Shown: positions 103 through 56,078 of the stretch, in pieces | Layout: each line of letters starts with the position of its first letter | How positions within the stretch are numbered: position 1 is the first letter of the stretch | Source: Octopus sinensis | Taxonomy: Eukaryota | DNA: 64,000 nucleotides | Assembly: GCF_006345805.1 (NCBI RefSeq) | Contig: NC_043015.1 | Location: 48,980,001-49,044,000, forward strand | Reading direction: 5' to 3' | Position numbers and translations under genes: made by a program | Notes under the pieces: model-generated | Seen by the model: the letters and a program-made list of their open reading frames with translations, nothing else | Told to the model about the DNA's origin: nothing | The model's database searches: none

Positions 103-156
103 GGATCTTTTCATTTAGTTAACTAGGAAAATCTGGCCTTCAAAATGAAAAGATCC
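103..156. mobile_element. 54-bp micro-MITE, GGATCT-ended (Merlin-like)
   Basis: 14-bp TIRs GGATCTTTTCATTT / AAATGAAAAGATCC; perfect 8-bp TSD GTCAATTG at 95-102 and 157-164. Confidence 0.85.
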
Positions 157-2665: not shown

Positions 2666-3968
2666 CGAAACCTGGAACCACGTGGTTGGGAAGCAAGTTT
2701 CTTACCACACAGCCACGCATGCGCCTACATGTACATGTATCTATGCTTGTATTTACCGGAGCGAATTTAAGCTTATTTCTGTTTCAGTCATTGGACTTTT
2801 ACCATTCTAGGGAACACAGAATAAAACAAATCGACCCTAGCACTGATTTTTTAAAGCCTGGTACTTATTCCATCGGATATCTTTTGCCGAACCGCTGTGT
2901 TAGGTGGAACGTGTCTGTTAAATGGAAGTAGCACCCTCCACACACACAGAGGATGGGCTTCTTGTAGTTTTGCAGTTTCCCAGTTTCCCTCCACCAAATC
3001 CATCCAAAAACCTTTGGTTGGCCCAAGGCAAACGCCTTACCACGCAGCCACGCCGGCGCCTTTACAATAGTTAAAAGCTTTTATATTCTATGTTCGCACC
3101 TGTTTCGTATTTAAAAGAAAGTAAACAATAGGTTATGAAACATTTTAAATTTTATTTTTCATTTTTATTATAATATTTTATATACTTCTATGTCAGATAC
3201 GAAGCAACAAAAGTGTCACGGCAGACCAATTGTGTCAAAAGGTTTGGGATGGGTCTTGTTAAAAGGCAACGATTAAGAATTATGTCAAATAAGATAAAAC
3301 TTACTCTGACGATATATCTTATTAAAAGAGTGACTGTGAGGTAACAAGTTTGCTTCTAACTATATTTTTCAGGTTCCGTCTCACTGCGTGGGACCTTGGG
3401 CGAGTGTCTTCTACTATAAGCTTGACCCAACCAAAACCTTGTGAATGGATTTGGTGGACGGAAACTGAAAGAAACCGGTCGTGTTATACATACAGTAAGA
3501 CACGATATGTTTTATACTCCAGTCACGCCAGTAGAGGGGGAAAAAAAGAAACGAGTAGAAGTGTGTGACAGTCAGCGACGCTAAATGCAGGTGAACTGTT
3601 TTGAGAGGGTTTACTCTGCAGTCACTAGTATTGCAAACAAAGCGAAACTGCAAAGTTTTATCGTAAATTATATTTAATTTATCAATTTTACACATACGTA
3701 TTCACACACGCTTACGCACGCACACACACACACTCACACACACGCACACGCACACACACATGCACGCACTAAGTTATATTTTAAAATATAGGAATACACT
3801 TTACCGGTTTCACATAAGATTTTCAAAAGTGTATATAGTGTATGGAGTTGTGTTACGAATTACATCTATTCTGGTCGTTGTTACCTTCGATTCTGTGTAT
3901 ATTATTTACCCGATTGTTTTGATGTGCAATTAATAAAACAGTCTGTACTTTTGATGATATGGGTATCC

Positions 3969-4029
<61 letters not shown>

Positions 4030-4284
4030 TGTGTCTTCTTTTTTGTTTTTAACCATTTAAATTCTTCGTTTGAAGGAGCTGATTTCTAACAAAGATACAG
4101 ATCTTCATCGTTACAATGTAGATAACAAAATCAATGCTACATTTTAAACCTGAGTAAAGTCTTGCATAGTTTTATTCTTCTGCTTACAAATTGTATTTGT
4201 AATGTGCGAGTTGGTCGATTTCTTTTTCTGAAAATCCAAGCTTATCCAGACTGACAGTTAGGCATTTGTATGTTATGCATTGTA

Positions 4285-4713
4285 TGTATGTATGTTATTG
4301 TATGGGGCCGAGACATGGCGAACAACAGTTAAGTCAAATAAGCAAATACAATCATTCATCAACAGATGCTTGCGTAGTATACTTAAAATTAGATGGCCCG
4401 AACCCATAAGCAATATGGAGCTATGGCAAAGAATAAATCAAGTTTCGATTAGGGAGCCAAATATTTAAGAAAAAGTGGAAGTGGATTGGTAGCACAATTA
4501 GAAAAGACACACCAAATGTAGCGAAAAGTGCTTTACAGTGGAATCCGGATGGATATAGAAAGAAAGGGTAGGCCTAAGAACTTGTGGCGGAGATCAACAC
4601 AGAAGGAACTAGAGAAACGGGGACATTCATGGCAGAGTATAAGTACAGAAGTGAAAAATTATGCAACATGGAATTCAACTATAAGTGGCATATACTCCGT
4701 GTTGGAGTGTTAA
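4285..4713 (+). mobile_element. RTE-clade LINE, C-terminal relic
   Basis: LLYGAETWRTT..FINRCLRSILKIRWPEPISNMELW, then RPKNLWRRSTQKELE across frameshifts; typical RTE C-terminus. Confidence 0.85.
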
Positions 4714-9376: not shown

Positions 9377-9417
9377 GTGTATTTGTATGGGGTCGTGCGT
9401 GTGCATATGTACATATA

Positions 9418-9588
9418 GGCGCAGGAGTGGCTGTGTGGCAAGTAGCTTGCTAACCAACCACATGGTTCCGGGTTCAGTCCCACTGCGTGGCACCTTGGGC
9501 AAGTGTCTTCTGCTATAGCCTCGGGCCGACCAAAGCCTTGTGAGTGGATTTGGTAGACGGAAACTGAAAGAAGCCTGTCGTATATATG

Positions 9589-9619
<31 letters not shown>

Positions 9620-9820
9620 TTGTGTGTCTGTGTTTGTCCCCCTAGCTTTGCTTGACAACCGATGCTGGTGTGTTTACGTCCCCGTCACTTAGCGGTTCGG
9701 CAAAATGGTCCGATAGAATAAGTACTGGGCTTACAAAGAATAAGTGCCGGGGTCGATTTGCTCGACTAAAGGTGGTGCTCCAGCATGGCTGCAGTCAAAT
9801 GACTGAAACAAGTAAAAGAG

Positions 9821-9821
<1 letters not shown>
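9418..9821 (+). mobile_element. SINE family A, full length
   Basis: GGCGCAGGAGTGGC head through the AAGTAAAAGAG tail. Confidence 0.92.
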
Positions 9822-9852
<31 letters not shown>

Positions 9853-10264
9853 TGTATGTATGTATGTATGTATGTACGTGTGTATGTATGTATGTATGTA
9901 TGCATGCATGCATGCATGCGTGTGTGTATGTTATTATTATGGCTGATCAGACACCCACTTTTTGGGTCTCAACAGCTGTTACACAAAAAAAAATTGCATA
10001 AAATATCGAAATTGAGTTTTTTACATGTCAATTAGAGTCCACAATAAATACATGACAGGCTGCTTTCAGTTTCCGTCTACCAAACCCACTCACAAAACTT
10101 TGGTCGTCCCAAGGCAATAGTAAGACACTCGCCCAATGTACCTCATTGTAGACTGAACCCCCCCCCCCCACCACCACCACCAGCCTTGTGATTGAGAAGC
10201 GAGCTTTTTATCAGACAGCCACGCTATTTTTGCGATTTTATGCAACACATGTTAAGAAAGTTGT

Positions 10265-10889: not shown

Positions 10890-11296
10890 GTGAGTTAATC
10901 TTTTTTATCTGTTTATCCTCTCCCACAACGGAATGTATCTTAGAAGTAATGACGATTAGGTGAGATTCTTAAAATGCTAAATAAGCTGTTGATAAGCACT
11001 TCTCCCTATTTAAGCCAAGTGGGGAGGATTCGAACGTGGACCTGCAAGCTTACGAACCTATTGTTATTTGTGGTATGCTGTCACAGGTAATGGTGGTTAA
11101 GTGTACCTTGGACCCCGTGAAGGGATCAAATAACAATTAGGTGGTTTTGTTCAACACAACAGTGAAGTGTTTTTGTGGCTAGTGATTGGCTAATAAATCG
11201 GTTTGTCGTTTAGACCTACTGACAGCCGATACTCGCCACGTGCTAACCAATGGCGACATTGATTGCATCCTAATCTAATTAGCTGACTTCTTTCTA

Positions 11297-11839
11297 TTGG
11301 GTTGTCCGGAAAGTTCGTGCCGATTTTTAAAGGAAAGAAAAAGGTCAATAAATACTTGCCATTACATTTTTAATCAACTAAATAGGAACCATTTTGCTGC
11401 CCAATGCGTCTCCATCTTTCCTTTAACTTGAAAATACCCTCTTCCCAGAATTGAGCTGGTTTCATGGCAAACAATTCATCAAGGTATATTTTTACGTCAT
11501 CCAAGGAATTGAAATTTTTACCATTAAGACTATTCTGCAGAGACCTGAATAAGTGGAAATCCGAAGGAGCAATATCTGGTGAATATGGAGGGTGGGTTAA
11601 CACATCCCAGCCGAGCTGCAGCAATTTTTGTCTGGTTCCCAAACATCAAGTGCCGAAAATGAACTTTCTTGTCTTCCATTTTAAAGGGTTACAGAATTAA
11701 CACAGGTTATAGGAACATAAGCCTTCTTCCACGAAAAGACAGCTTAAACTGTGCTCTAAATGGAGGTGTAGTCAAATCCTATTTTATGGACTCAACCATA
11801 AGCTACTATAAATCGGCATGAACTTTCCGGACAACCCAA
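11297..11839 (-). mobile_element. Internally deleted mariner element retaining the transposase C-terminus
   Basis: TIRs TTGGGTTGTCCGGAAAGTTC at both ends, TA at left; ORF 11370-11642 contains HPPYSPDIAPSDFHLFRSLQN..FWEEGIFKLKERW. Confidence 0.95.
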
Positions 11840-14240: not shown

Positions 14241-14402
14241 CACGGCGAGAGATTACTGTGTTGGATTTTAATTGTTTTTTTAATGTTTATGCAGAATTCC
14301 GAAATATTGTCTTTAATTTCATTCTGGTTAGATCTTCACGAGATTGGGCTAAATTTTAATCCTTTAGCTAGTATACTAACCTTTGTTACAGGGAGAGTTT
14401 TC

Positions 14403-14817
14403 GGATCTTTTCGGTTTGAACGGCAGTTTTTTTTTTCTAGCGGTGTCATATGAAATTGTCACCCATAATTATGACCCTAGAATCGTTCTATTGCATTTCA
14501 ATCTCTTTTAGGGTTAGGGGTGGGGGAAAGGGTATCTTTTTTTCTTCAGAAATGTAAATAAACCCAATCTGTTTCTTAAACGAGGGACATAGTCATACGG
14601 CACAGAATGCTTTTTTACTCAATTGACGTCACTGATTGGTTGAAATTGCAGAAATTGAAGAAAAACAACAACAAATATCTTACAAACCATAGAATTTTCT
14701 CGATAAAGGCAAGAGAAAAAGATGTTTTATAAACACATTCTACGAGTATACGAAGTTAAACATTTTTTAATTACCTAGAAATTATGTTAAAAACTGCCGT
14801 TCAAACCGAAAAGATCC
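14403..14817. mobile_element. ~415-bp GGATCT-ended MITE (Merlin-like), copy 1
   Basis: 28-bp TIRs GGATCTTTTCGGTTTGAACGGCAGTTTT; near-identical to 46847 and 55067; flanks do not match each other. Confidence 0.92.
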
Positions 14818-14994
14818 GAAATGAGTAACACCGTGCATCAAGTACAGGCAATATCAATTTGAGGCAGCGAGTAAGCTAATGGACGATATATACATTCATT
14901 CACGATAAGACAAGCCATCTGTACAGATTGTTCAGCAGGAAATTACAGAACCATCTTTCTCGGACTACGAGAGATTGTCATTAGTTAATTTATA

Positions 14995-23237: not shown

Positions 23238-23770
23238 ACTCTTTACTCTCTTTTTTACTCTTTTACTTGTTTCAGTCATTTGACTGCGGCCATGCTGGAG
23301 CACCGCCTTTTAGTCAAACAAATCGACCCCAGGACTTATTACTCTTTTACTCTCTTTTACTCTTTTACTTGTTTCAGTCATTTGACTGCGGCTATGCTGG
23401 AGCATCGCCTTTAATCGAGCAACTCGACCCCGGGACTTATTCTTCTTTTTAAGTCCAGTACTTATTCTATCGGTTTCTTTTGCCGAACCGCTAAGTAACG
23501 GGGACATAAACACACCAGCATCGGTTGTCAAGCAATGCTAGGGGGACAAACACAGACACACAAACACACACACACACACACGCATATATACATATACATA
23601 TATACGACGGGCTTCTTTCAGTTTCCGTCTACCAAATCCACTCACAAGGCATTGGTCGGCCCGAGGCTATAGTAGAAGACACTTGCCCAATGTGCCACGC
23701 AGTGGGACTGAACCTGGAACCATGTGGTTGGTAAGCAAGCTACTTACCACACAGCCACTCCTGCGCCTAT
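23238..23770 (-). mobile_element. SINE family A with a duplicated ~100-bp 3' end
   Basis: Tail block occurs twice, at 23238-23340 and 23340-23440. Confidence 0.92.
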
Positions 23771-31816: not shown

Positions 31817-31977
31817 CAGGAGTGGCTGTGTGGTAAGTAGCTTGCTAACCAACCACATTGTTCCGGGTTCAGTCCCACTGCGTGGCATCTTGGGCAAGTG
31901 TCTTCTGCTATAGCCCCGGGCCGACCAATGCCTTGTGAGTGGATTTGGTAGGCGGAAACTGAAAGGAGCCTGTCGTA

Positions 31978-32022
<45 letters not shown>

Positions 32023-32225
32023 TTGTGTGTCTGTGTTTGTCCCCCCAACATCGCTTGACAACCGATGCTGGTGTGTTTATGTCCCCGTTACTTAGCGGTT
32101 CGGCAAAAAGAGTCCGATAGAATAAGTACTAGGCTTACAAAGAATAAGTCCCGGGGTCGATTTGCTCGATTAAAGGCGGTGCTCCAGCATGGCCGCAGTC
32201 AAATGACTGAAACAAGTAAAGAAAA
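31817..32225 (+). mobile_element. SINE family A
   Basis: Matches consensus. Confidence 0.92.
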
Positions 32226-32984: not shown

Positions 32985-33037
32985 GTAAGAACAACATCAA
33001 CGACGATTACAGCGACAACAACGACACCAACAACAGC

Positions 33038-33678
33038 GGATCTTTACCTTTTGACCGCCTCAATTACGCTAAGAGTAAAAGATGTTTTACAGCGATCCCT
33101 CGTTTATCGCGGTAGATTGGTTCCAAGACCGGCCGCGATAACTGGATTTCAGCGAACTAGGGACACCATATTTACAGTATTTATTTAACGGGTATTTGGA
33201 CTTTTAAAACCCTCCCTGTACTGTTAACAACCCACCCATTACAGTAGTCTATTAATAACAAGGACAACTGTTAAGCAATAATACTCTAGATTTAAAAAAA
33301 TAAAGATTGTTACTGTTACACAGGCCAGATTACAAAATAGAAAGCTGTGATTAGTCGTCTCTCTCTCCATTGCACCAATCACAGCCCGTCTTAAGTTCAA
33401 ATACCCCTGTATATGCTTTTTTGCGATTTTACGCTTGTTTTGTTGTTCCTAGACTAGGAAATAACATTTATTATTAATATTTCAATGGATTTAATGAAAA
33501 ATTTTAGGTGTCATATATATATATATATTTAAATCCGCGAAGTCGTGAATCCGTGATAGTTGAACCGCGAAGTAGCGAGGGATCACTGTATATGACACGT
33601 TCTACATGTGTCCGAAGTTAGAAAGTGTTTAGTTACAAAAAATTACTTTTTAATCTGTCGGTCAAAAGGTAAAGATCC
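33038..33678. mobile_element. GGATCT-ended MITE (Merlin-like), deleted left arm, with a nested insertion
   Basis: TIRs GGATCTTTACCTTTTGACCG / CGGTCAAAAGGTAAAGATCC. Confidence 0.9.
33090..33588. mobile_element. pogo/Tigger-like MITE nested in the 33038 element
   Basis: TA|CAGCGATCCCTCG ... CGAGGGATCACTG|TA; removing it restores GATGTTTTATATGACAC, matching the sister element. Confidence 0.92.
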
Positions 33679-33794
33679 TATAATTTAACATTTATGGTGA
33701 GTGATGAAATTACTTCTAATTCATTTAAGTAAGAATATAACTAATCCTTACTTAACGTAGACATTTACTAATTCACGTCCACGGTTGCTGTTGT

Positions 33795-34393
33795 GGATCT
33801 TTACCTTTTGACCGACAGATTTAAAAAATAATTTTTTGTAACTAGACACTTTCAAACTTCGGACATGGTAGAATGTGTCATATAAAACATGTTTTACTCT
33901 TAGCGTTTTTGAGAAAAGCTTATAATTACGAAGTTATTTCACGTTAAAGTTGTCCTATTTCGGTAATTTCAACCAATCAATGACGTGTATTCAGCTGAAT
34001 GAAATTACTGCTGTTGTTTGTCAACAACAACTATCGGCGGGGTATTTTTTGTTTGTCACTGTTATTTATGACATCATTCGTGCGTTTGTAACTGGTTTTA
34101 GGGTTAGGGTTGTCATAAATAACAGTGACAAACGAAATATACACCGCCGGAAGCTCTTGATGACAAACAACAGCAGTAACCTTATTCAGCTGAATACACG
34201 TCATTGATTGGTTGAAATTACCGAAATAGGACTACTTTAACGTGAAATAACTTCGTAAATATAAGTTTTTTTCTCGAAAATACTAAGAGTAAAAGATATT
34301 TTATATGACACATTCTACCAGTGTCCGAAGTTTGAAAGTGTTTAGTTACGAAAAAATTATTTTAAAAATCTGCCGGTCAAATGGTAAAGATCC
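33795..34393. mobile_element. ~600-bp foldback GGATCT-ended MITE (Merlin-like)
   Basis: Two long near-perfect inverted arms covering most of the element; shares internal blocks with the 415-bp family. Confidence 0.93.
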
Positions 34394-34701
34394 AAATTAT
34401 AACTTACAAAACAAAATAATTCGAATAAGCAACTAGGAGTATTTAATTGGGAGTTAAAATCTCAAATAAAGCACAAGCATACCTCAGTTTCGTTTCTTGT
34501 TACGCTTTTTTCGATTTTGTGTCGTTTTGTTTCTTTTCTTTACGAAATAAACCTGAACTTCAGTCGATTTACGTCGTCTCAGCGGACATATTTAAAAGCA
34601 TAAGCATTTAAAAAAAGAAAATACCCCAAAAACCAATACTGAAGGGGAAAACTAAAAATGAAATACTTGTGAAAATATGTACAATCTATTGAATAGATAT
34701 A

Positions 34702-36523: not shown

Positions 36524-36593
<70 letters not shown>

Positions 36594-36615
36594 ACACACA
36601 TACATATACATACGT

Positions 36616-37003
36616 ACAGGAGTGGCTGTGTGGTAAGTAGCTTGCTTACCAACCACATGTGTCCGGGTTCAGTCCCACTGCGTGACACCTTGGGCAAGTG
36701 TCTTCTACTATAGCCTCGGGCCAACCAAAGCCTTGTGAGTGGATTTGGTAGACGGAAACTGAAAGAATCCCGTCGTATATATGTGTGTGTGTGTGTTTCT
36801 GTTTGTATGTCTGTGTTTGTCCCCCCCCAACATTGCTTGATAACCGATGCTGGTGTGTTTACGTCCCTGTCACTTAGCGGTTCGGCAAGAGAATCCAATA
36901 GAATAAGTGCTAGGCTTACAAATAATAAGTTCTGGGGTCAATTTGCTCGACTAAAGGCGGTGCCCCAGCATGGCCGCAGTCAAATGACTGAAACAAATAA
37001 AAG
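36616..37003 (+). mobile_element. SINE family A
   Basis: Matches consensus. Confidence 0.92.
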
Positions 37004-37482
37004 AACACATACACATCATCGTAGACTTACGACCTATTCGACTTACGACCGTTCGACTTTACGACGATTGGCGCGCCAGCTCCCGGCGGCGATAGTAAAT
37101 AGTCCAATTGAAATCTAATGGGTTCAATTTCTTAGAAATTAACTTGTCTACGGGTGGTGTCAGCTAACAAACGCTTCCCCTAGGTTTCGTTATCGATCGC
37201 CACTGTGATGGATGAATATCCTGTCGTGGAGACATCGAGGCAACCTCTTATTTGTTTATAAGACGACTGCCTGAGACTCCGAAATGTTTGACTAACGCCA
37301 GTATAGTAGTATAACACAGAATGCTGAGTGTGACCTTTACGCGAGAATGTACCTTAAGAATGTAGAAATACAAAACAAAGCTATGTGTAGGCCTATAGGC
37401 CGATTTACGACTAGTCAGTCGGAACGAATTGTGGTCATAAATCGACGACGACCTGTATGTATGTATGTATATATATATATAT

Positions 37483-46846: not shown

Positions 46847-47265
46847 GGATCTTTTCGGTTTGAACGACAGTTTTTTCTAGCGGTGTCATATGAAATTGTC
46901 ACCCATAATTATGACCCTAGTGTCGATCTATTGCATTTCAATATCTTTTGAGGTTAGGGTTAGGGGTGGGGGAAGGGTATCTTTTTTTCTTCACAGATGT
47001 AAATAAACCCAATCTGTTTCTTAAACGAGGGACATATTCGTACGGCACAGAATGTTGTTTACCTCAATAGACGTCAGTGATTGGTTGAAATTGCAGAAAT
47101 TGAAGAAAAAAAAACAACAAATATCTTACAAACTATAGAATTTTCTCAATAAAGCCAAGAGAAAACGATGTTTTATAAACACATTCTACCAGTATACGAA
47201 GTTTAAAATTTTTTTAGTTACGTGGAAATTATTTTTAAAAACTGCCGTTCAAACCGAAAAGATCC
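46847..47265. mobile_element. ~415-bp GGATCT-ended MITE, copy 2
   Basis: 28-bp TIRs; 8-bp TSD GAGAAACC at 46839-46846 and 47266-47273. Confidence 0.96.
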
Positions 47266-54309: not shown

Positions 54310-55066
54310 CTACGTTTACACGGACGTCTACAAATCGGTGACCCAGTGCCAGCTTAATGACCAACCGCTCTTTCGACCTCGGCGGAATTTGAACTCGGAA
54401 CGTAGCGGCAGACGAAATACTACTAAGCATTTCGCCCGGTGTGCTAACGTTTCTGCCAGTTCGCCGCCTTATGCAGGCTTCATTAACTATCTTGTTCCTG
54501 CGTATTTTAGGAAGGCCGTAAAAGAGACTAGATTTACATTTAAAGTTCGTGATATATAATCTATTTCTTTTTCTGTCAGGTCTTTTCCATGTAGAAGAAT
54601 TAAGGATGCAAGATTTTTCATTGTTTTTTGTTTATAGTTTACAACTTTTTCCTAGATAACACTCGGCTTTTGTAGTATTCTGCGTCCATCAGGACTATAG
54701 CACTTCCTTTGTCTGCTTCTTTAATTGTCAGTTCTTTGTCATTTTGTAGTTCAATTAGATATTTCCATTCTAGATTGTTGAGGTTTGAGTTAATTTTCCG
54801 CTTATGGAAAATATTTGGAAAATTTTGGATATGGTCGCAGAAGACATCTTGTATTTTATTCTTACATTTAGATGTAAGATAATTACTTCTGTTTTTAACC
54901 AGTGATTCATCCTGCTGCTGTAGTCAGTTAGTACTTCTGTGAGTCGCAATTTTCCGCAGAATTCCGAAATATTGTCTTTAATTTCATTCTGGTTAGATCT
55001 TCATGGGGTGGGGTAAATTTTAATCCTTTAGCTAGTATACTAATCTTTGTTACAGAGAGAGTTTTC

Positions 55067-55482
55067 GGATCTTTTCGGTTTGAACGGCAGTTTTTCTAGC
55101 AGTGTCATATGAAATTGTCACCCATAATTATGACCCTAGTATCGATCTATTGCATTTCAATCTGTTTTAGGGTTAGGGGTGGGGTGGGGGGAAGGGTATC
55201 TTTTTTTCTTCACAAATGTAAATAAACCCAATCTGTTTCTTAAACGAGGGACATATTCATACGGCATAGAATGTTTTTTTTACCTCAGTGGACGTCATTG
55301 ATTGGTTGAAATTGTAGAAATTGAAGAAAAAAACAACAAATATCTTACAAACTATAGAATTTTCTCAATAAAGCCAAGAGAAAAAGATGTTTTATAAAGA
55401 CATTCTACCAGTATACGAAGTTTTAAATTTTTTAGTTACCTAGAAATTATGTTAAAAACTGCCGTTCAAACCGAAAAGATCC
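55067..55482. mobile_element. ~415-bp GGATCT-ended MITE, copy 3
   Basis: 28-bp TIRs; 8-bp TSD GAGTTTTC at 55059-55066 and 55483-55490. Confidence 0.96.
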
Positions 55483-56078
55483 GAGTTTTCTTTGATAAAT
55501 TCATTACTTCGGGCTTCTCTTGCATGTTTTAATAAAATCTATCTTAATTTTCTGTAGAATGTATTTGCCTGTCATATTTTATAAAGGGTTAATATATTTT
55601 TTATTGAAATATAAAGACAAAGGAATCTCCGTCAAGAAGACAGAATGTTTGTCATCAACAGTGAAACAAAATTACCAAACAAGTAGAATTTATTTTTTAT
55701 AATGTCAACAATTTGTTGTACTCTAAACTTAAAGAATCTACCAGACTTAATTAAGTTCTTCTGACCTTCAAGTTGAACGATGTAGTTGAAAACTAATATG
55801 CTGATAACATTTTGACTGAAACAAAACATTCTATTTAACGAATTTTTGACATGAGTCAACACTAATTTTGAAGCCACTTACGAAGGTAAAATATATCAAC
55901 CTTCATCGTTGATTAAAGGGTCTCAAAAGACAACTTTAACTTGCCACCATTTACAGACTTAAACATCTCTCCCTCATCATCCACGTATATGATGACAACG
56001 ACCCGACCAGGGATGGAGTTTCTAACACAAGATCGTTCCATCTGCTAGAAATAACAGTCAAGTTCCTATCAAACCCAT

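What the first reader, a model, noticed from the sequence alone, without database searches (positions are those of the whole stretch)
33030..34401. Cross-swapped TSDs reveal an inversion between two Merlin-like MITEs
Seen: ACAACAGC [element 33038-33678] TATAATTT ..116-bp spacer.. GCTGTTGT [element 33795-34393] AAATTATA. Each inner 8-mer is the exact reverse complement of the far outer 8-mer. Inverting 33679-33794 gives each element a perfect TSD and restores the ACAACAGCAACC context. Inference: either recombination between two insertions ~100 bp apart, or a single intramolecular replicative or alternative transposition event of the type known for bacterial IS elements. The latter would be notable for a eukaryotic IS1016-related family. 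Together with the one-sided copy at 14403, the family appears to rearrange flanking DNA.
Basis: partly seen in the sequence, partly recalled or inferred. Interest (0 to 1): 0.8.

Follow-up and report, generated by a model that had tools for sequence, protein, structure and literature searches.

The report
Tiny inversion between two octopus MITEs
Two small non-coding transposon copies lying 116 bases apart, in what looks like an octopus genome, carry swapped target-site duplications, which shows that the short stretch between them was flipped; this is a clean example of a transposon-caused rearrangement of an already well-known kind.

Summary
ACAACAGC[E1 33038-33678]TATAATTT...GCTGTTGT[E2 33795-34393]AAATTATA is in the sequence. 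Each inner 8-mer is the reverse complement of the far outer one, the match stops at exactly 8 bp, and chance is about 1e-8. Related copies in the window and in Octopus bimaculoides have ordinary 8-bp duplications, so a flip of the 116-bp inter-element segment is the only simple reading.

No empty or orthologous site could be reached, so the ancestral orientation is inferred, not seen.

E1 and E2 are not copies of each other today. E2 is a 599-bp near-palindrome. E1 is a 140-bp deletion derivative carrying a nested 499-bp TA-flanked element.

Most likely (about 0.45) there were two insertions about 100 bp apart, then an exchange between their facing inverted ends. The main rival (about 0.3) is a one-step hybrid-element (sister-chromatid) insertion, which gives the same flanks but needs identical copies at birth. 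True replicative transposition is unlikely.

The Merlin assignment is plausible: GG tips, 8-bp duplications, and one octopus Merlin gene with a homologous end. It is not proven.

Exchanged duplications at transposon-bounded inversions are textbook (Galileo, BuT5, Ds, IS26). This is a new member of a known kind, of modest interest.

The parts
33030..33037 (+). Outer left 8-mer ACAACAGC, one half of target-site duplication 'a'
   Evidence: Read directly. It is the exact reverse complement of 33787-33794.
33038..33678 (.). E1, 641 bp. It is a 140-bp internally deleted MITE: a 20-bp left tip, one C, then the last ~120 bp of an E2-type arm. A nested element interrupts it.
   Evidence: Perfect 20-bp terminal inverted repeats (I8). 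Alignment to the E2 arms gives 91.6% and 86.7% over ~120 columns.
33090..33588 (.). Nested 499-bp non-coding element inside E1. Its ends are CAGCGATCCCTCG.../...CGAGGGATCACTG and it is flanked by a TA duplication (33088-33089 and 33589-33590), which is Tc1/mariner-like. It is a later, unrelated insertion.
   Evidence: I13; ends printed. Removing it restores colinearity with the E2 arm. There is no other copy in the window.
33679..33794 (.). Inter-element segment, 116 bp, inferred to be inverted relative to its flanks. It begins with TATAATTT (rc of duplication 't') and ends with GCTGTTGT (rc of duplication 'a').
   Evidence: It is unique in the window. Together with the two facing element ends it can fold as a 90-bp stem with a 116-nt loop, -85.5 kcal/mol, z = -18.7.
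33795..34393 (.). E2, 599 bp, a near-palindromic MITE. The arms are 33795-34073 and 34111-34393, 90% alike. The 37-nt centre holds (TTAGGG)2 at 34098-34109.
   Evidence: I1, I2, I4, I5; arm identity; tips. It is 83% identical to a MITE with a perfect 8-bp duplication in O. bimaculoides.
34394..34401 (+). Outer right 8-mer AAATTATA, one half of target-site duplication 't'
   Evidence: Read directly. It is the exact reverse complement of 33679-33686.

Best explanation
This is a transposon-bounded micro-inversion.

Shown: two non-coding elements of one GGATC-tipped family, which makes 8-bp duplications, flank a 116-bp segment, and their four flanking 8-mers are exchanged.

Inferred history, in order:
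1. The original site read X-ACAACAGC-(100 bp)-AAATTATA-Y, with the 100 bp in the opposite orientation to today.
2. One element inserted at ACAACAGC and another at AAATTATA, each making its own 8-bp duplication. The second was probably a local hop of the first. In that case the short E1 is what incomplete gap repair left at the donor site.
3. An exchange between the inverted, homologous ends that face each other across the spacer then flipped the spacer together with the element tips. These ends are E1's right ~90 bp and E2's left ~90 bp, 91% alike with a 27-bp identical tip. The exchange could have been homologous recombination, possibly started by a transposase cut, or polymerase template switching across the hairpin these ends can form.
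4. Such an exchange leaves no footprint and carries each inner 8-mer to the other element, which is what is seen.
5. The TA-flanked element entered E1 later.

The elements are old, with roughly 7-9% change per arm.
For: - Exchanged 8-mers are exact, limited to 8 bp, and have a chance of about 1e-8.
- The 8-bp direct duplication is the rule in related copies.
- The facing ends are inverted repeats: 42-45 nt at 88-93% (I3, I6), 91% over 91 nt, longest identical run 27 nt.
- The single-strand fold is a 90-bp stem with a 116-nt loop, z = -18.7.
- All four junctions are intact with no footprint, as expected for a homology-driven exchange.
- E1 and E2 differ in structure, which two separate insertions explain without any extra event.
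- Direct precedents exist. A single rice Ds gave a second, inverted Ds 1.1 kb away with its own duplication, and recombination between the pair inverted the segment between them in 11% of regenerants. Galileo and the MITE BuT5 sit at Drosophila inversion breakpoints with exchanged duplications. [quoted passage not shown]
Against: - No empty, single-element or un-flipped state of the locus was found, so the ancestral orientation and the two-step order are inferred only.
- Two same-family insertions 108 bp apart is a coincidence unless local hopping is assumed. Only this one locus with these tips exists in 64 kb.
- Chimerism of the two copies, the feature that proved recombination for Galileo, cannot be tested. 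Unique changes in the ~120 shared columns are E1 8, E2-left 3, E2-right 9, which is star-like and gives no topology. The O. bimaculoides relative does not tell the arms apart either.
- Only 90-120 bp of 91% homology across a 116-bp spacer is a poor substrate for classical double-strand recombination.
Confidence: 0.45

Rival explanations
1. One-step alternative transposition (hybrid element insertion, or sister-chromatid transposition). One E2-like element sat at ACAACAGC. After replication, the transposase paired the left end of the copy on one sister chromatid with the right end of the copy on the other, and inserted this hybrid at AAATTATA, 100 bp away. The product chromatid is X-a-[E]-t'-s'-a'-[E inverted]-t-Y, which is the observed flank pattern. 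It has two copies, no footprint, and no replicative chemistry. E1 later lost about 459 bp internally and gained the nested element.
For: - My own derivation of the product matches the description in Delprat et al. (their Figure S1A): the outcome is 'strikingly similar' to ectopic recombination except that the copies are identical.
- It explains the 108-bp proximity and the flip in a single event.
- The junctions are footprint-free.
- The distance between E1's arm and E2's left arm (10 mismatches) is about the same as between E2's own two arms (11). All three could therefore date from one moment.
- Palindromic elements such as E2 are prone to deletion (my own knowledge).
Against: - The defining prediction, two identical copies, is not met as the sequence stands: 140 bp plus an insert versus 599 bp. 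An extra internal deletion that happens to spare a 20-bp tip is needed.
- No transposition chemistry or alternative transposition has been described for Merlin (my knowledge; nothing found).
Confidence: 0.3
2. True intramolecular replicative transposition of the bacterial IS26/Tn3 type. One element is copied during attack on a site 100 bp away in the same molecule, giving two inverted copies and an inverted segment between them.
For: It gives the same flank pattern; reverse-complement 8-bp duplications are the accepted signature for IS26 (title and abstract of PMC4471558). Merlin transposases share the DDE_Tnp_IS1595 domain with bacterial IS1595/IS1016 elements.
Against: - The copies are not identical.
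- The hybrid-element route yields the same product with ordinary cut-and-paste chemistry, so nothing here calls for replication.
- Replicative transposition is not established for eukaryotic DDE elements with terminal inverted repeats, nor for the IS1595 family (my own knowledge).
Confidence: 0.03
3. Transposase cut both inner tips (E1 right, E2 left), released the 116-bp spacer, and end-joining put it back the other way round.
For: The breakpoints coincide exactly with the two element tips. Paired inward-facing ends are known substrates (reversed-ends transposition).
Against: Four ends would have had to be rejoined without losing or adding a single base. In reversed-ends events the flanks are normally joined to each other with a footprint, and the freed ends insert elsewhere.
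Confidence: 0.05
4. Assembly artefact, or an unfixed flip-flop. The spacer orientation between two inverted repeats was mis-resolved, or both orientations exist in the population or the individual.
For: A short spacer between 90-bp inverted repeats is a classic place for orientation errors. No reads were available to check.
Against: - The longest identical inverted run is only 27 nt and the arms are 91% alike, so normal k-mers or any long read would resolve the orientation.
- Even if the spacer orientation were an assembly error, the elements and their duplications would remain real.
Confidence: 0.07

Closest known systems
Galileo-bounded inversions 2j, 2q7 and 2z3 of Drosophila buzzatii (ectopic recombination)
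   Same: Foldback-like DNA transposon copies at both breakpoints, exchanged target-site duplications, and no deletion or duplication.
   Different: Those are megabase chromosomal inversions, polymorphic, with the non-inverted state available and chimeric copies demonstrated. Galileo is in the P superfamily and makes 7-bp duplications. Here the flipped segment is 116 bp, the event is old, no standard arrangement is available, chimerism is untestable, and the duplications are 8 bp.
BuT5 MITE inversions (2s in D. mojavensis, 2x3 in D. uniseta)
   Same: A non-autonomous MITE at each breakpoint with exchanged 8-9-bp duplications.
   Different: BuT5 is mobilised by a P element and the inversions are large. 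Here the likely partner is a Merlin-type transposase and the scale is about 100 bp.
[quoted passage not shown]
   Same: A local re-insertion gave two inverted copies close together, each with its own 8-bp duplication. Recombination between them flipped the segment in between at high frequency.
   Different: Those were 5.9-kb identical hAT elements 1.1 kb apart, observed experimentally. Here the homology is 90-280 bp, the spacing is 116 bp, and the history is inferred from one sequence.
Hybrid element insertion (P element) and sister-chromatid transposition (Ac/Ds)
   Same: They give the same product: two inverted copies bounding an inverted segment, with exchanged duplications and no footprint.
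   Different: They require the two copies to be identical at birth, and E1 and E2 are not identical now. They have never been reported for Merlin.
Intramolecular replicative transposition of IS26 (and Tn3, Mu)
   Same: Reverse-complement 8-bp duplications on two inverted copies. The transposase domain is distantly shared between Merlin and the bacterial IS1595 family.
   Different: That is a bacterial, genuinely replicative process with identical copies. Nothing here requires replication.
Template-switch inversion of spacers between short inverted repeats (yeast lineage)
   Same: Non-identical inverted repeats with a short spacer whose orientation flips, leaving no footprint.
   Different: It was described for much shorter repeats and spacers within genes, and transposon ends are not involved.

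Membership tests
Merlin superfamily (eukaryotic, IS1595/IS1016-related DDE transposons) | Conserved terminal 5'-GG | tested here: met
   All four tips of E1 and E2 and all related copies start with GGATC. The criterion comes from PMC8101967. A bona fide 8.7-kb octopus Merlin also starts with GGC.
Merlin superfamily (eukaryotic, IS1595/IS1016-related DDE transposons) | 8- or 9-bp target-site duplication | tested here: met
   Perfect 8-bp direct duplications at 46847-47265, 55067-55482 and L008 5575-6284. E1 and E2 have 8 bp once the spacer is conceptually flipped back. hAT, P and some Mutator elements also make 8 bp, so this feature is not exclusive to Merlin.
Merlin superfamily (eukaryotic, IS1595/IS1016-related DDE transposons) | Terminal inverted repeats of 24-462 bp | tested here: met
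   E2's arms are about 280 bp at 90%. E1 keeps only a 20-bp perfect repeat because of its internal deletion.
Merlin superfamily (eukaryotic, IS1595/IS1016-related DDE transposons) | An autonomous partner with the same ends that encodes a DDE_Tnp_IS1595 transposase | tested here: inconclusive
   There is no Merlin coding remnant in the window. In O. bimaculoides contig L008, a DDE_Tnp_IS1595 gene (3223-4056) is followed by an outward-facing end at 4602. That end has the GGATCTTT tip and a 59-bp block 88% identical to the subterminal region of an E2-like MITE. The other end was not found because the contig is short, and the only relative (L009) is degraded. Merlin is abundant in O. bimaculoides.
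MITE (non-autonomous element with terminal inverted repeats) | Short, no coding capacity, terminal inverted repeats plus duplications, several copies | tested here: met
   The elements are 140-710 bp. The internal ORF has no homologue among 5.8 billion proteins. Repeats and duplications are as above. Copies or subfamilies occur at five places in the window and in O. bimaculoides.
Transposon-mediated inversion by ectopic recombination (Galileo/BuT5 type) | Exchanged target-site duplications, with no loss or gain of flanking DNA | tested here: met
Transposon-mediated inversion by ectopic recombination (Galileo/BuT5 type) | Homologous sequences in inverted orientation at the two breakpoints | tested here: met
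   E1's right end and E2's left end are 91% alike over 91 nt.
Transposon-mediated inversion by ectopic recombination (Galileo/BuT5 type) | Both copies chimeric relative to their parents | tested here: inconclusive
   The three-way comparison of arms is star-like (8, 3 and 9 unique changes) and the outgroup MITE does not tell the arms apart. No parental copies are available.
Transposon-mediated inversion by ectopic recombination (Galileo/BuT5 type) | A single copy of each target 8-mer, and the opposite orientation, in the non-inverted arrangement | not testable with these tools
   No orthologue or allele could be reached: protein routes; DNA scans; the only hits were chance matches in prokaryotic genes.
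Hybrid element insertion / sister-chromatid alternative transposition | The two bounding copies are identical (sister copies of one insertion) and mutually inverted | tested here: not met
   As the sequence stands, E1 is 140 bp plus a nested insert and E2 is a 599-bp palindrome. They share about 140 bp at 87-92%. A later deletion could hide original identity, so the mechanism is not excluded. Relative orientation cannot be determined.
Intramolecular replicative transposition (IS26/Tn3 type) | Two identical inverted copies with reverse-complement duplications, made by a replicative transposase | tested here: not met
   The duplication pattern is met. Identity of the copies is not met. The chemistry is not testable here.

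The most novel reading that the evidence does not exclude
The pair and the flip arose in a single transposase-mediated event: a hybrid-element (sister-chromatid) insertion of one Merlin-type MITE into a site 100 bp away. This would be the first natural trace of alternative transposition in the Merlin/IS1595 lineage, and a sign that such events create MITE pairs and micro-inversions in cephalopod genomes.
Probability: 0.3. Interest if true: 0.5.

Novelty: new member of a known kind. Interest (0 to 1): 0.3.

Why it matters
The locus shows that the exchanged-duplication signature, normally used at megabase inversions, also resolves a 100-bp flip between two MITEs. It also suggests that octopus GGATC-tipped, probably Merlin-mobilised MITEs can remodel their immediate surroundings.

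By itself the flip is a neutral, old, non-coding event. Its value is as a search pattern. A genome-wide census of close MITE pairs with direct versus exchanged duplications, and with identical versus different copies, would measure how often cut-and-paste elements make micro-inversions. It would also show whether they arise by recombination or by alternative transposition, in a repeat-rich cephalopod genome where Merlin is unusually abundant.

Tried and rejected
- **Looking for the locus or an empty site elsewhere.** Exact look-ups of two ORFs that overlap the locus found nothing on record. A 24-mer from the spacer had 0 hits in metagenome contigs. The 20-bp tip had only two chance hits inside prokaryotic coding DNA and none in prokaryotic genomes. 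A homologue search with the E2 ORF found nothing.
- **Paralogues in the window.** The flanks X and Y and the spacer have none, apart from a SINE-like piece in Y.
- **Relative orientation and chimerism of E1 and E2.** I tried three-way arm alignments, the 75%-identical subfamily and the O. bimaculoides MITE as outgroups. None was informative. The shared (TTAGGG)2 marker is deleted in E1.
- **A composite element that inserted as one unit.** Rejected, because the outer 8-mers ACAACAGC and AAATTATA do not match.
- **Reversed-ends transposition into the circularised spacer.** Rejected, because it would leave direct repeats at the two spacer ends.
- **Gene or RNA context.** Pfam on ten window ORFs and Rfam on 30-38 kb found nothing.
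- **A second Merlin locus to define both ends of the GGATC-tipped autonomous element.** L009 is degraded and L010 is unrelated.
- **The L005-L007 Merlin family.** It has different tips (GGCGATG.../GGCATAG...), so it is not the partner of these MITEs.

Full report
**What is there**

- The 20-bp tip occurs four times in the 64-kb window, only at these ends, against none expected.
- GCTGTTGT is the reverse complement of ACAACAGC, and AAATTATA is the reverse complement of TATAATTT. Neither relation can be stretched to 9 bp.
- From the window's own 8-mer spectrum, the chance of both matches is about 3e-8. From the frequencies of these two particular words it is 8.6e-9.

**Is 8 bp the right length for this kind of element?**

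Yes. A subfamily about 75% identical (tips GGATCTTTTCGGTTTGAACGGCAG) has copies at 46847-47265 and 55067-55482 with perfect direct duplications, GAGAAACC and GAGTTTTC. An element 83% identical to E2 in an Octopus bimaculoides contig (L008 5575-6284) is flanked by TAACGTTG on both sides. The family therefore normally leaves an 8-bp direct duplication. E1 and E2 each lack one, but each would have a perfect one if 33679-33794 were turned round. The outer 8-mers do not match each other, so the pair did not insert as one unit. I consider the flip established as well as a single sequence can establish it. It is still an inference, because no unoccupied site was seen.

**Anatomy of the two elements**

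- E2 (599 bp) is a near-palindrome. Its arms, 33795-34073 and 34111-34393, are 90% alike, and its 37-nt centre contains (TTAGGG)2.
- E1 (641 bp) is composite. A 499-bp element with ends CAGCGATCCCTCG.../...CGAGGGATCACTG and a TA duplication sits at 33090-33588.
- Without that insert, E1 is 140 bp: the 20-bp left tip, one C, then the last ~120 bp of an E2-type arm. E1 is thus an internally deleted derivative, lacking about 459 bp, of something like E2.
- In the ~120 shared columns, E1 differs from the reverse complement of E2's left arm at 10 sites and from E2's right arm at 16. E2's two arms differ at 11. Unique changes are E1 8, E2-left 3, E2-right 9.
- That pattern is star-like. It dates all three arms to roughly the same time (about 7-9% change) but carries no information on who copied whom.
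- The more distant copies do not tell left arms from right arms either, so relative orientation and chimerism cannot be decided.

**Where the window comes from**

It is repeat- and microsatellite-rich animal DNA with no detectable genes. Its SINE-like repeats match an Octopus vulgaris chromosome at about 90%, and the MITE family is present in O. bimaculoides. The source is therefore an octopod, species undetermined. A published octopus repeat analysis places a wave of elements with terminal inverted repeats at Jukes-Cantor distance 0.09, which fits the divergence seen here.

**Is it Merlin?**

- The literature defines Merlin by GG tips, inverted repeats of 24-462 bp, 8-9-bp duplications and a DDE_Tnp_IS1595 transposase. 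It reports 191 Merlin sequences in O. bimaculoides. The first three features are met here.
- For the fourth, I took an O. bimaculoides Merlin protein from that paper's supplement, found octopus relatives and fetched their loci.
- One family (L005, L006, L007) is a clear 8.7-kb Merlin with 354-bp inverted repeats, tips GGCGATG.../GGCATAG..., and 8-bp duplications GCAAATCT and CAAGGCTT. This confirms Merlin behaviour in octopus, but its ends are different from those of E1 and E2.
- In L008 a Merlin gene (3223-4056) is followed 546 bp downstream by an outward-facing end at 4602. That end has the GGATCTTT tip and a 59-bp block 88% identical to the subterminal region of the neighbouring E2-like MITE. 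This is the expected look of the autonomous partner's right end.
- The left end lies outside the 8-kb contig, and the only relative (L009) is degraded. Membership is therefore likely but not shown.

**How the flip arose**

The literature states the alternatives plainly. Exchanged duplications arise from ectopic recombination between two inverted copies. They arise equally from a hybrid-element insertion, in which the left end of one sister copy and the right end of the other insert together nearby. The outcomes differ only in that the copies are chimeric in the first case and identical in the second. I derived the second product independently, and it is X-a-[E]-t'-s'-a'-[E inverted]-t-Y, which matches the locus. 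True replicative transposition, as in IS26, gives the same picture.

*For recombination after two insertions:*
- The elements are structurally different now.
- The facing ends are 91%-identical inverted repeats with a 27-bp identical tip.
- As single strands they form a 90-bp stem with a 116-nt loop, z = -18.7.
- All junctions are footprint-free.
- In rice, the same two steps were watched directly: a local inverted re-insertion with its own duplication, then a recombinational flip of the intervening segment in 11% of plants.
- Template switching between imperfect inverted repeats is also a documented way to flip a spacer.
- A local hop with incomplete gap repair at the donor site would also explain why one copy is an internal deletion of the other. 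This step is my inference.

*For the one-step route:*
- It explains the 108-bp proximity without any added assumption.
- It is equally footprint-free.
- The equal distances among the three arms allow a common birth date.

*Against the one-step route:*
- It needs an additional 459-bp internal deletion in E1.

*My estimates:*
- Two-step recombination or template switching: about 0.45.
- Hybrid-element insertion: about 0.3.
- Cut-and-religation of the spacer: about 0.05.
- Assembly error or unfixed flip-flop: about 0.07.
- True replicative transposition: about 0.03.

**The copy at 14403**

It belongs to the 75%-identical subfamily. The stretch 14291-14819 is 92% identical to 54956-55484. That is 112 bp of left flank plus the element, and the homology stops 2 bp past the right tip. 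The 55067 copy has the intact duplication. The composite at 14291-14817 has none. This is unexplained. It may be an end-associated rearrangement, but it is not evidence about E1 and E2.

**Comparison and verdict**

Transposon-bounded inversions with exchanged duplications are well known: Galileo and the MITE BuT5 in Drosophila, Ds in rice, IS26 in bacteria. What is particular here is the very small scale (116 bp), the probable Merlin affiliation and the cephalopod host. The finding is real and neatly readable, but it is a new member of a known kind. Even then it would most likely be hybrid-element insertion, which is already established for eukaryotic cut-and-paste elements, rather than replicative transposition.

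Noticed in passing
window 33090-33588: A 499-bp non-coding element with ends CAGCGATCCCTCG.../...CGAGGGATCACTG and a TA duplication is nested in E1. It looks like a Tc1/mariner-type MITE. No second copy exists in the window.
   Followed up: partly
window 14291-14819 and 54956-55484: The MITE copy at 14403-14817 is a 92%-identical paralogue of the copy at 55067-55482 together with 112 bp of its left flank. Homology ends 2 bp past the right tip. The 55067 copy has a perfect GAGTTTTC duplication. The unit at 14291-14817 has no duplication of its own. The origin is unexplained.
   Followed up: partly
window 14508, 34098, 46954, 55167: TTAGGGTTAGGG, two telomere-type repeats, occurs exactly four times in the window. 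Each occurrence is inside a MITE of this group and all are on the + strand. It is a conserved internal motif of the family, deleted in E1.
   Followed up: partly
window 129-156: This is the right end of a further related element (...CTGGCCTTCAAAATGAAAAGATCC), preceded by AG and GATA microsatellites. The rest of the element lies off the window or is replaced by the repeats.
   Followed up: no
L005 265-8996, L007 252-8997, L006 (to ~8941): An 8.7-kb Merlin element with 354-bp terminal inverted repeats (tips GGCGATG.../GGCATAG...) and 8-bp duplications. It encodes an identical 305-aa DDE_Tnp_IS1595 protein at two O. sinensis loci and one O. vulgaris locus, which are 98-99.6% identical in DNA. It appears to have been recently active.
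   Followed up: partly
L008 3223-4602 and 5575-6284: In this O. bimaculoides contig, a Merlin transposase gene is followed by a GGATCTTT-tipped end at 4602. About 1 kb further on lies a 710-bp palindromic MITE (duplication TAACGTTG) that shares a 59-bp subterminal block with that end.
   Followed up: yes
L009 6778-7249: The O. sinensis Merlin gene related to the L008 gene is interrupted by about 470 bp that matches the terminal repeat of the L005-type Merlin at about 90%. One Merlin family has inserted into another.
   Followed up: no
window, many places (e.g. 9405-9931, 23353-23770, 31817-32220, 36561-37007): At least ten copies of a ~400-500-bp SINE-like repeat are 82-91% identical to one stretch of an O. 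vulgaris chromosome (L003 ~11200-11700). Long TG, TA and CATA-type microsatellites produce most of the long 'ORFs' in the window.
   Followed up: no
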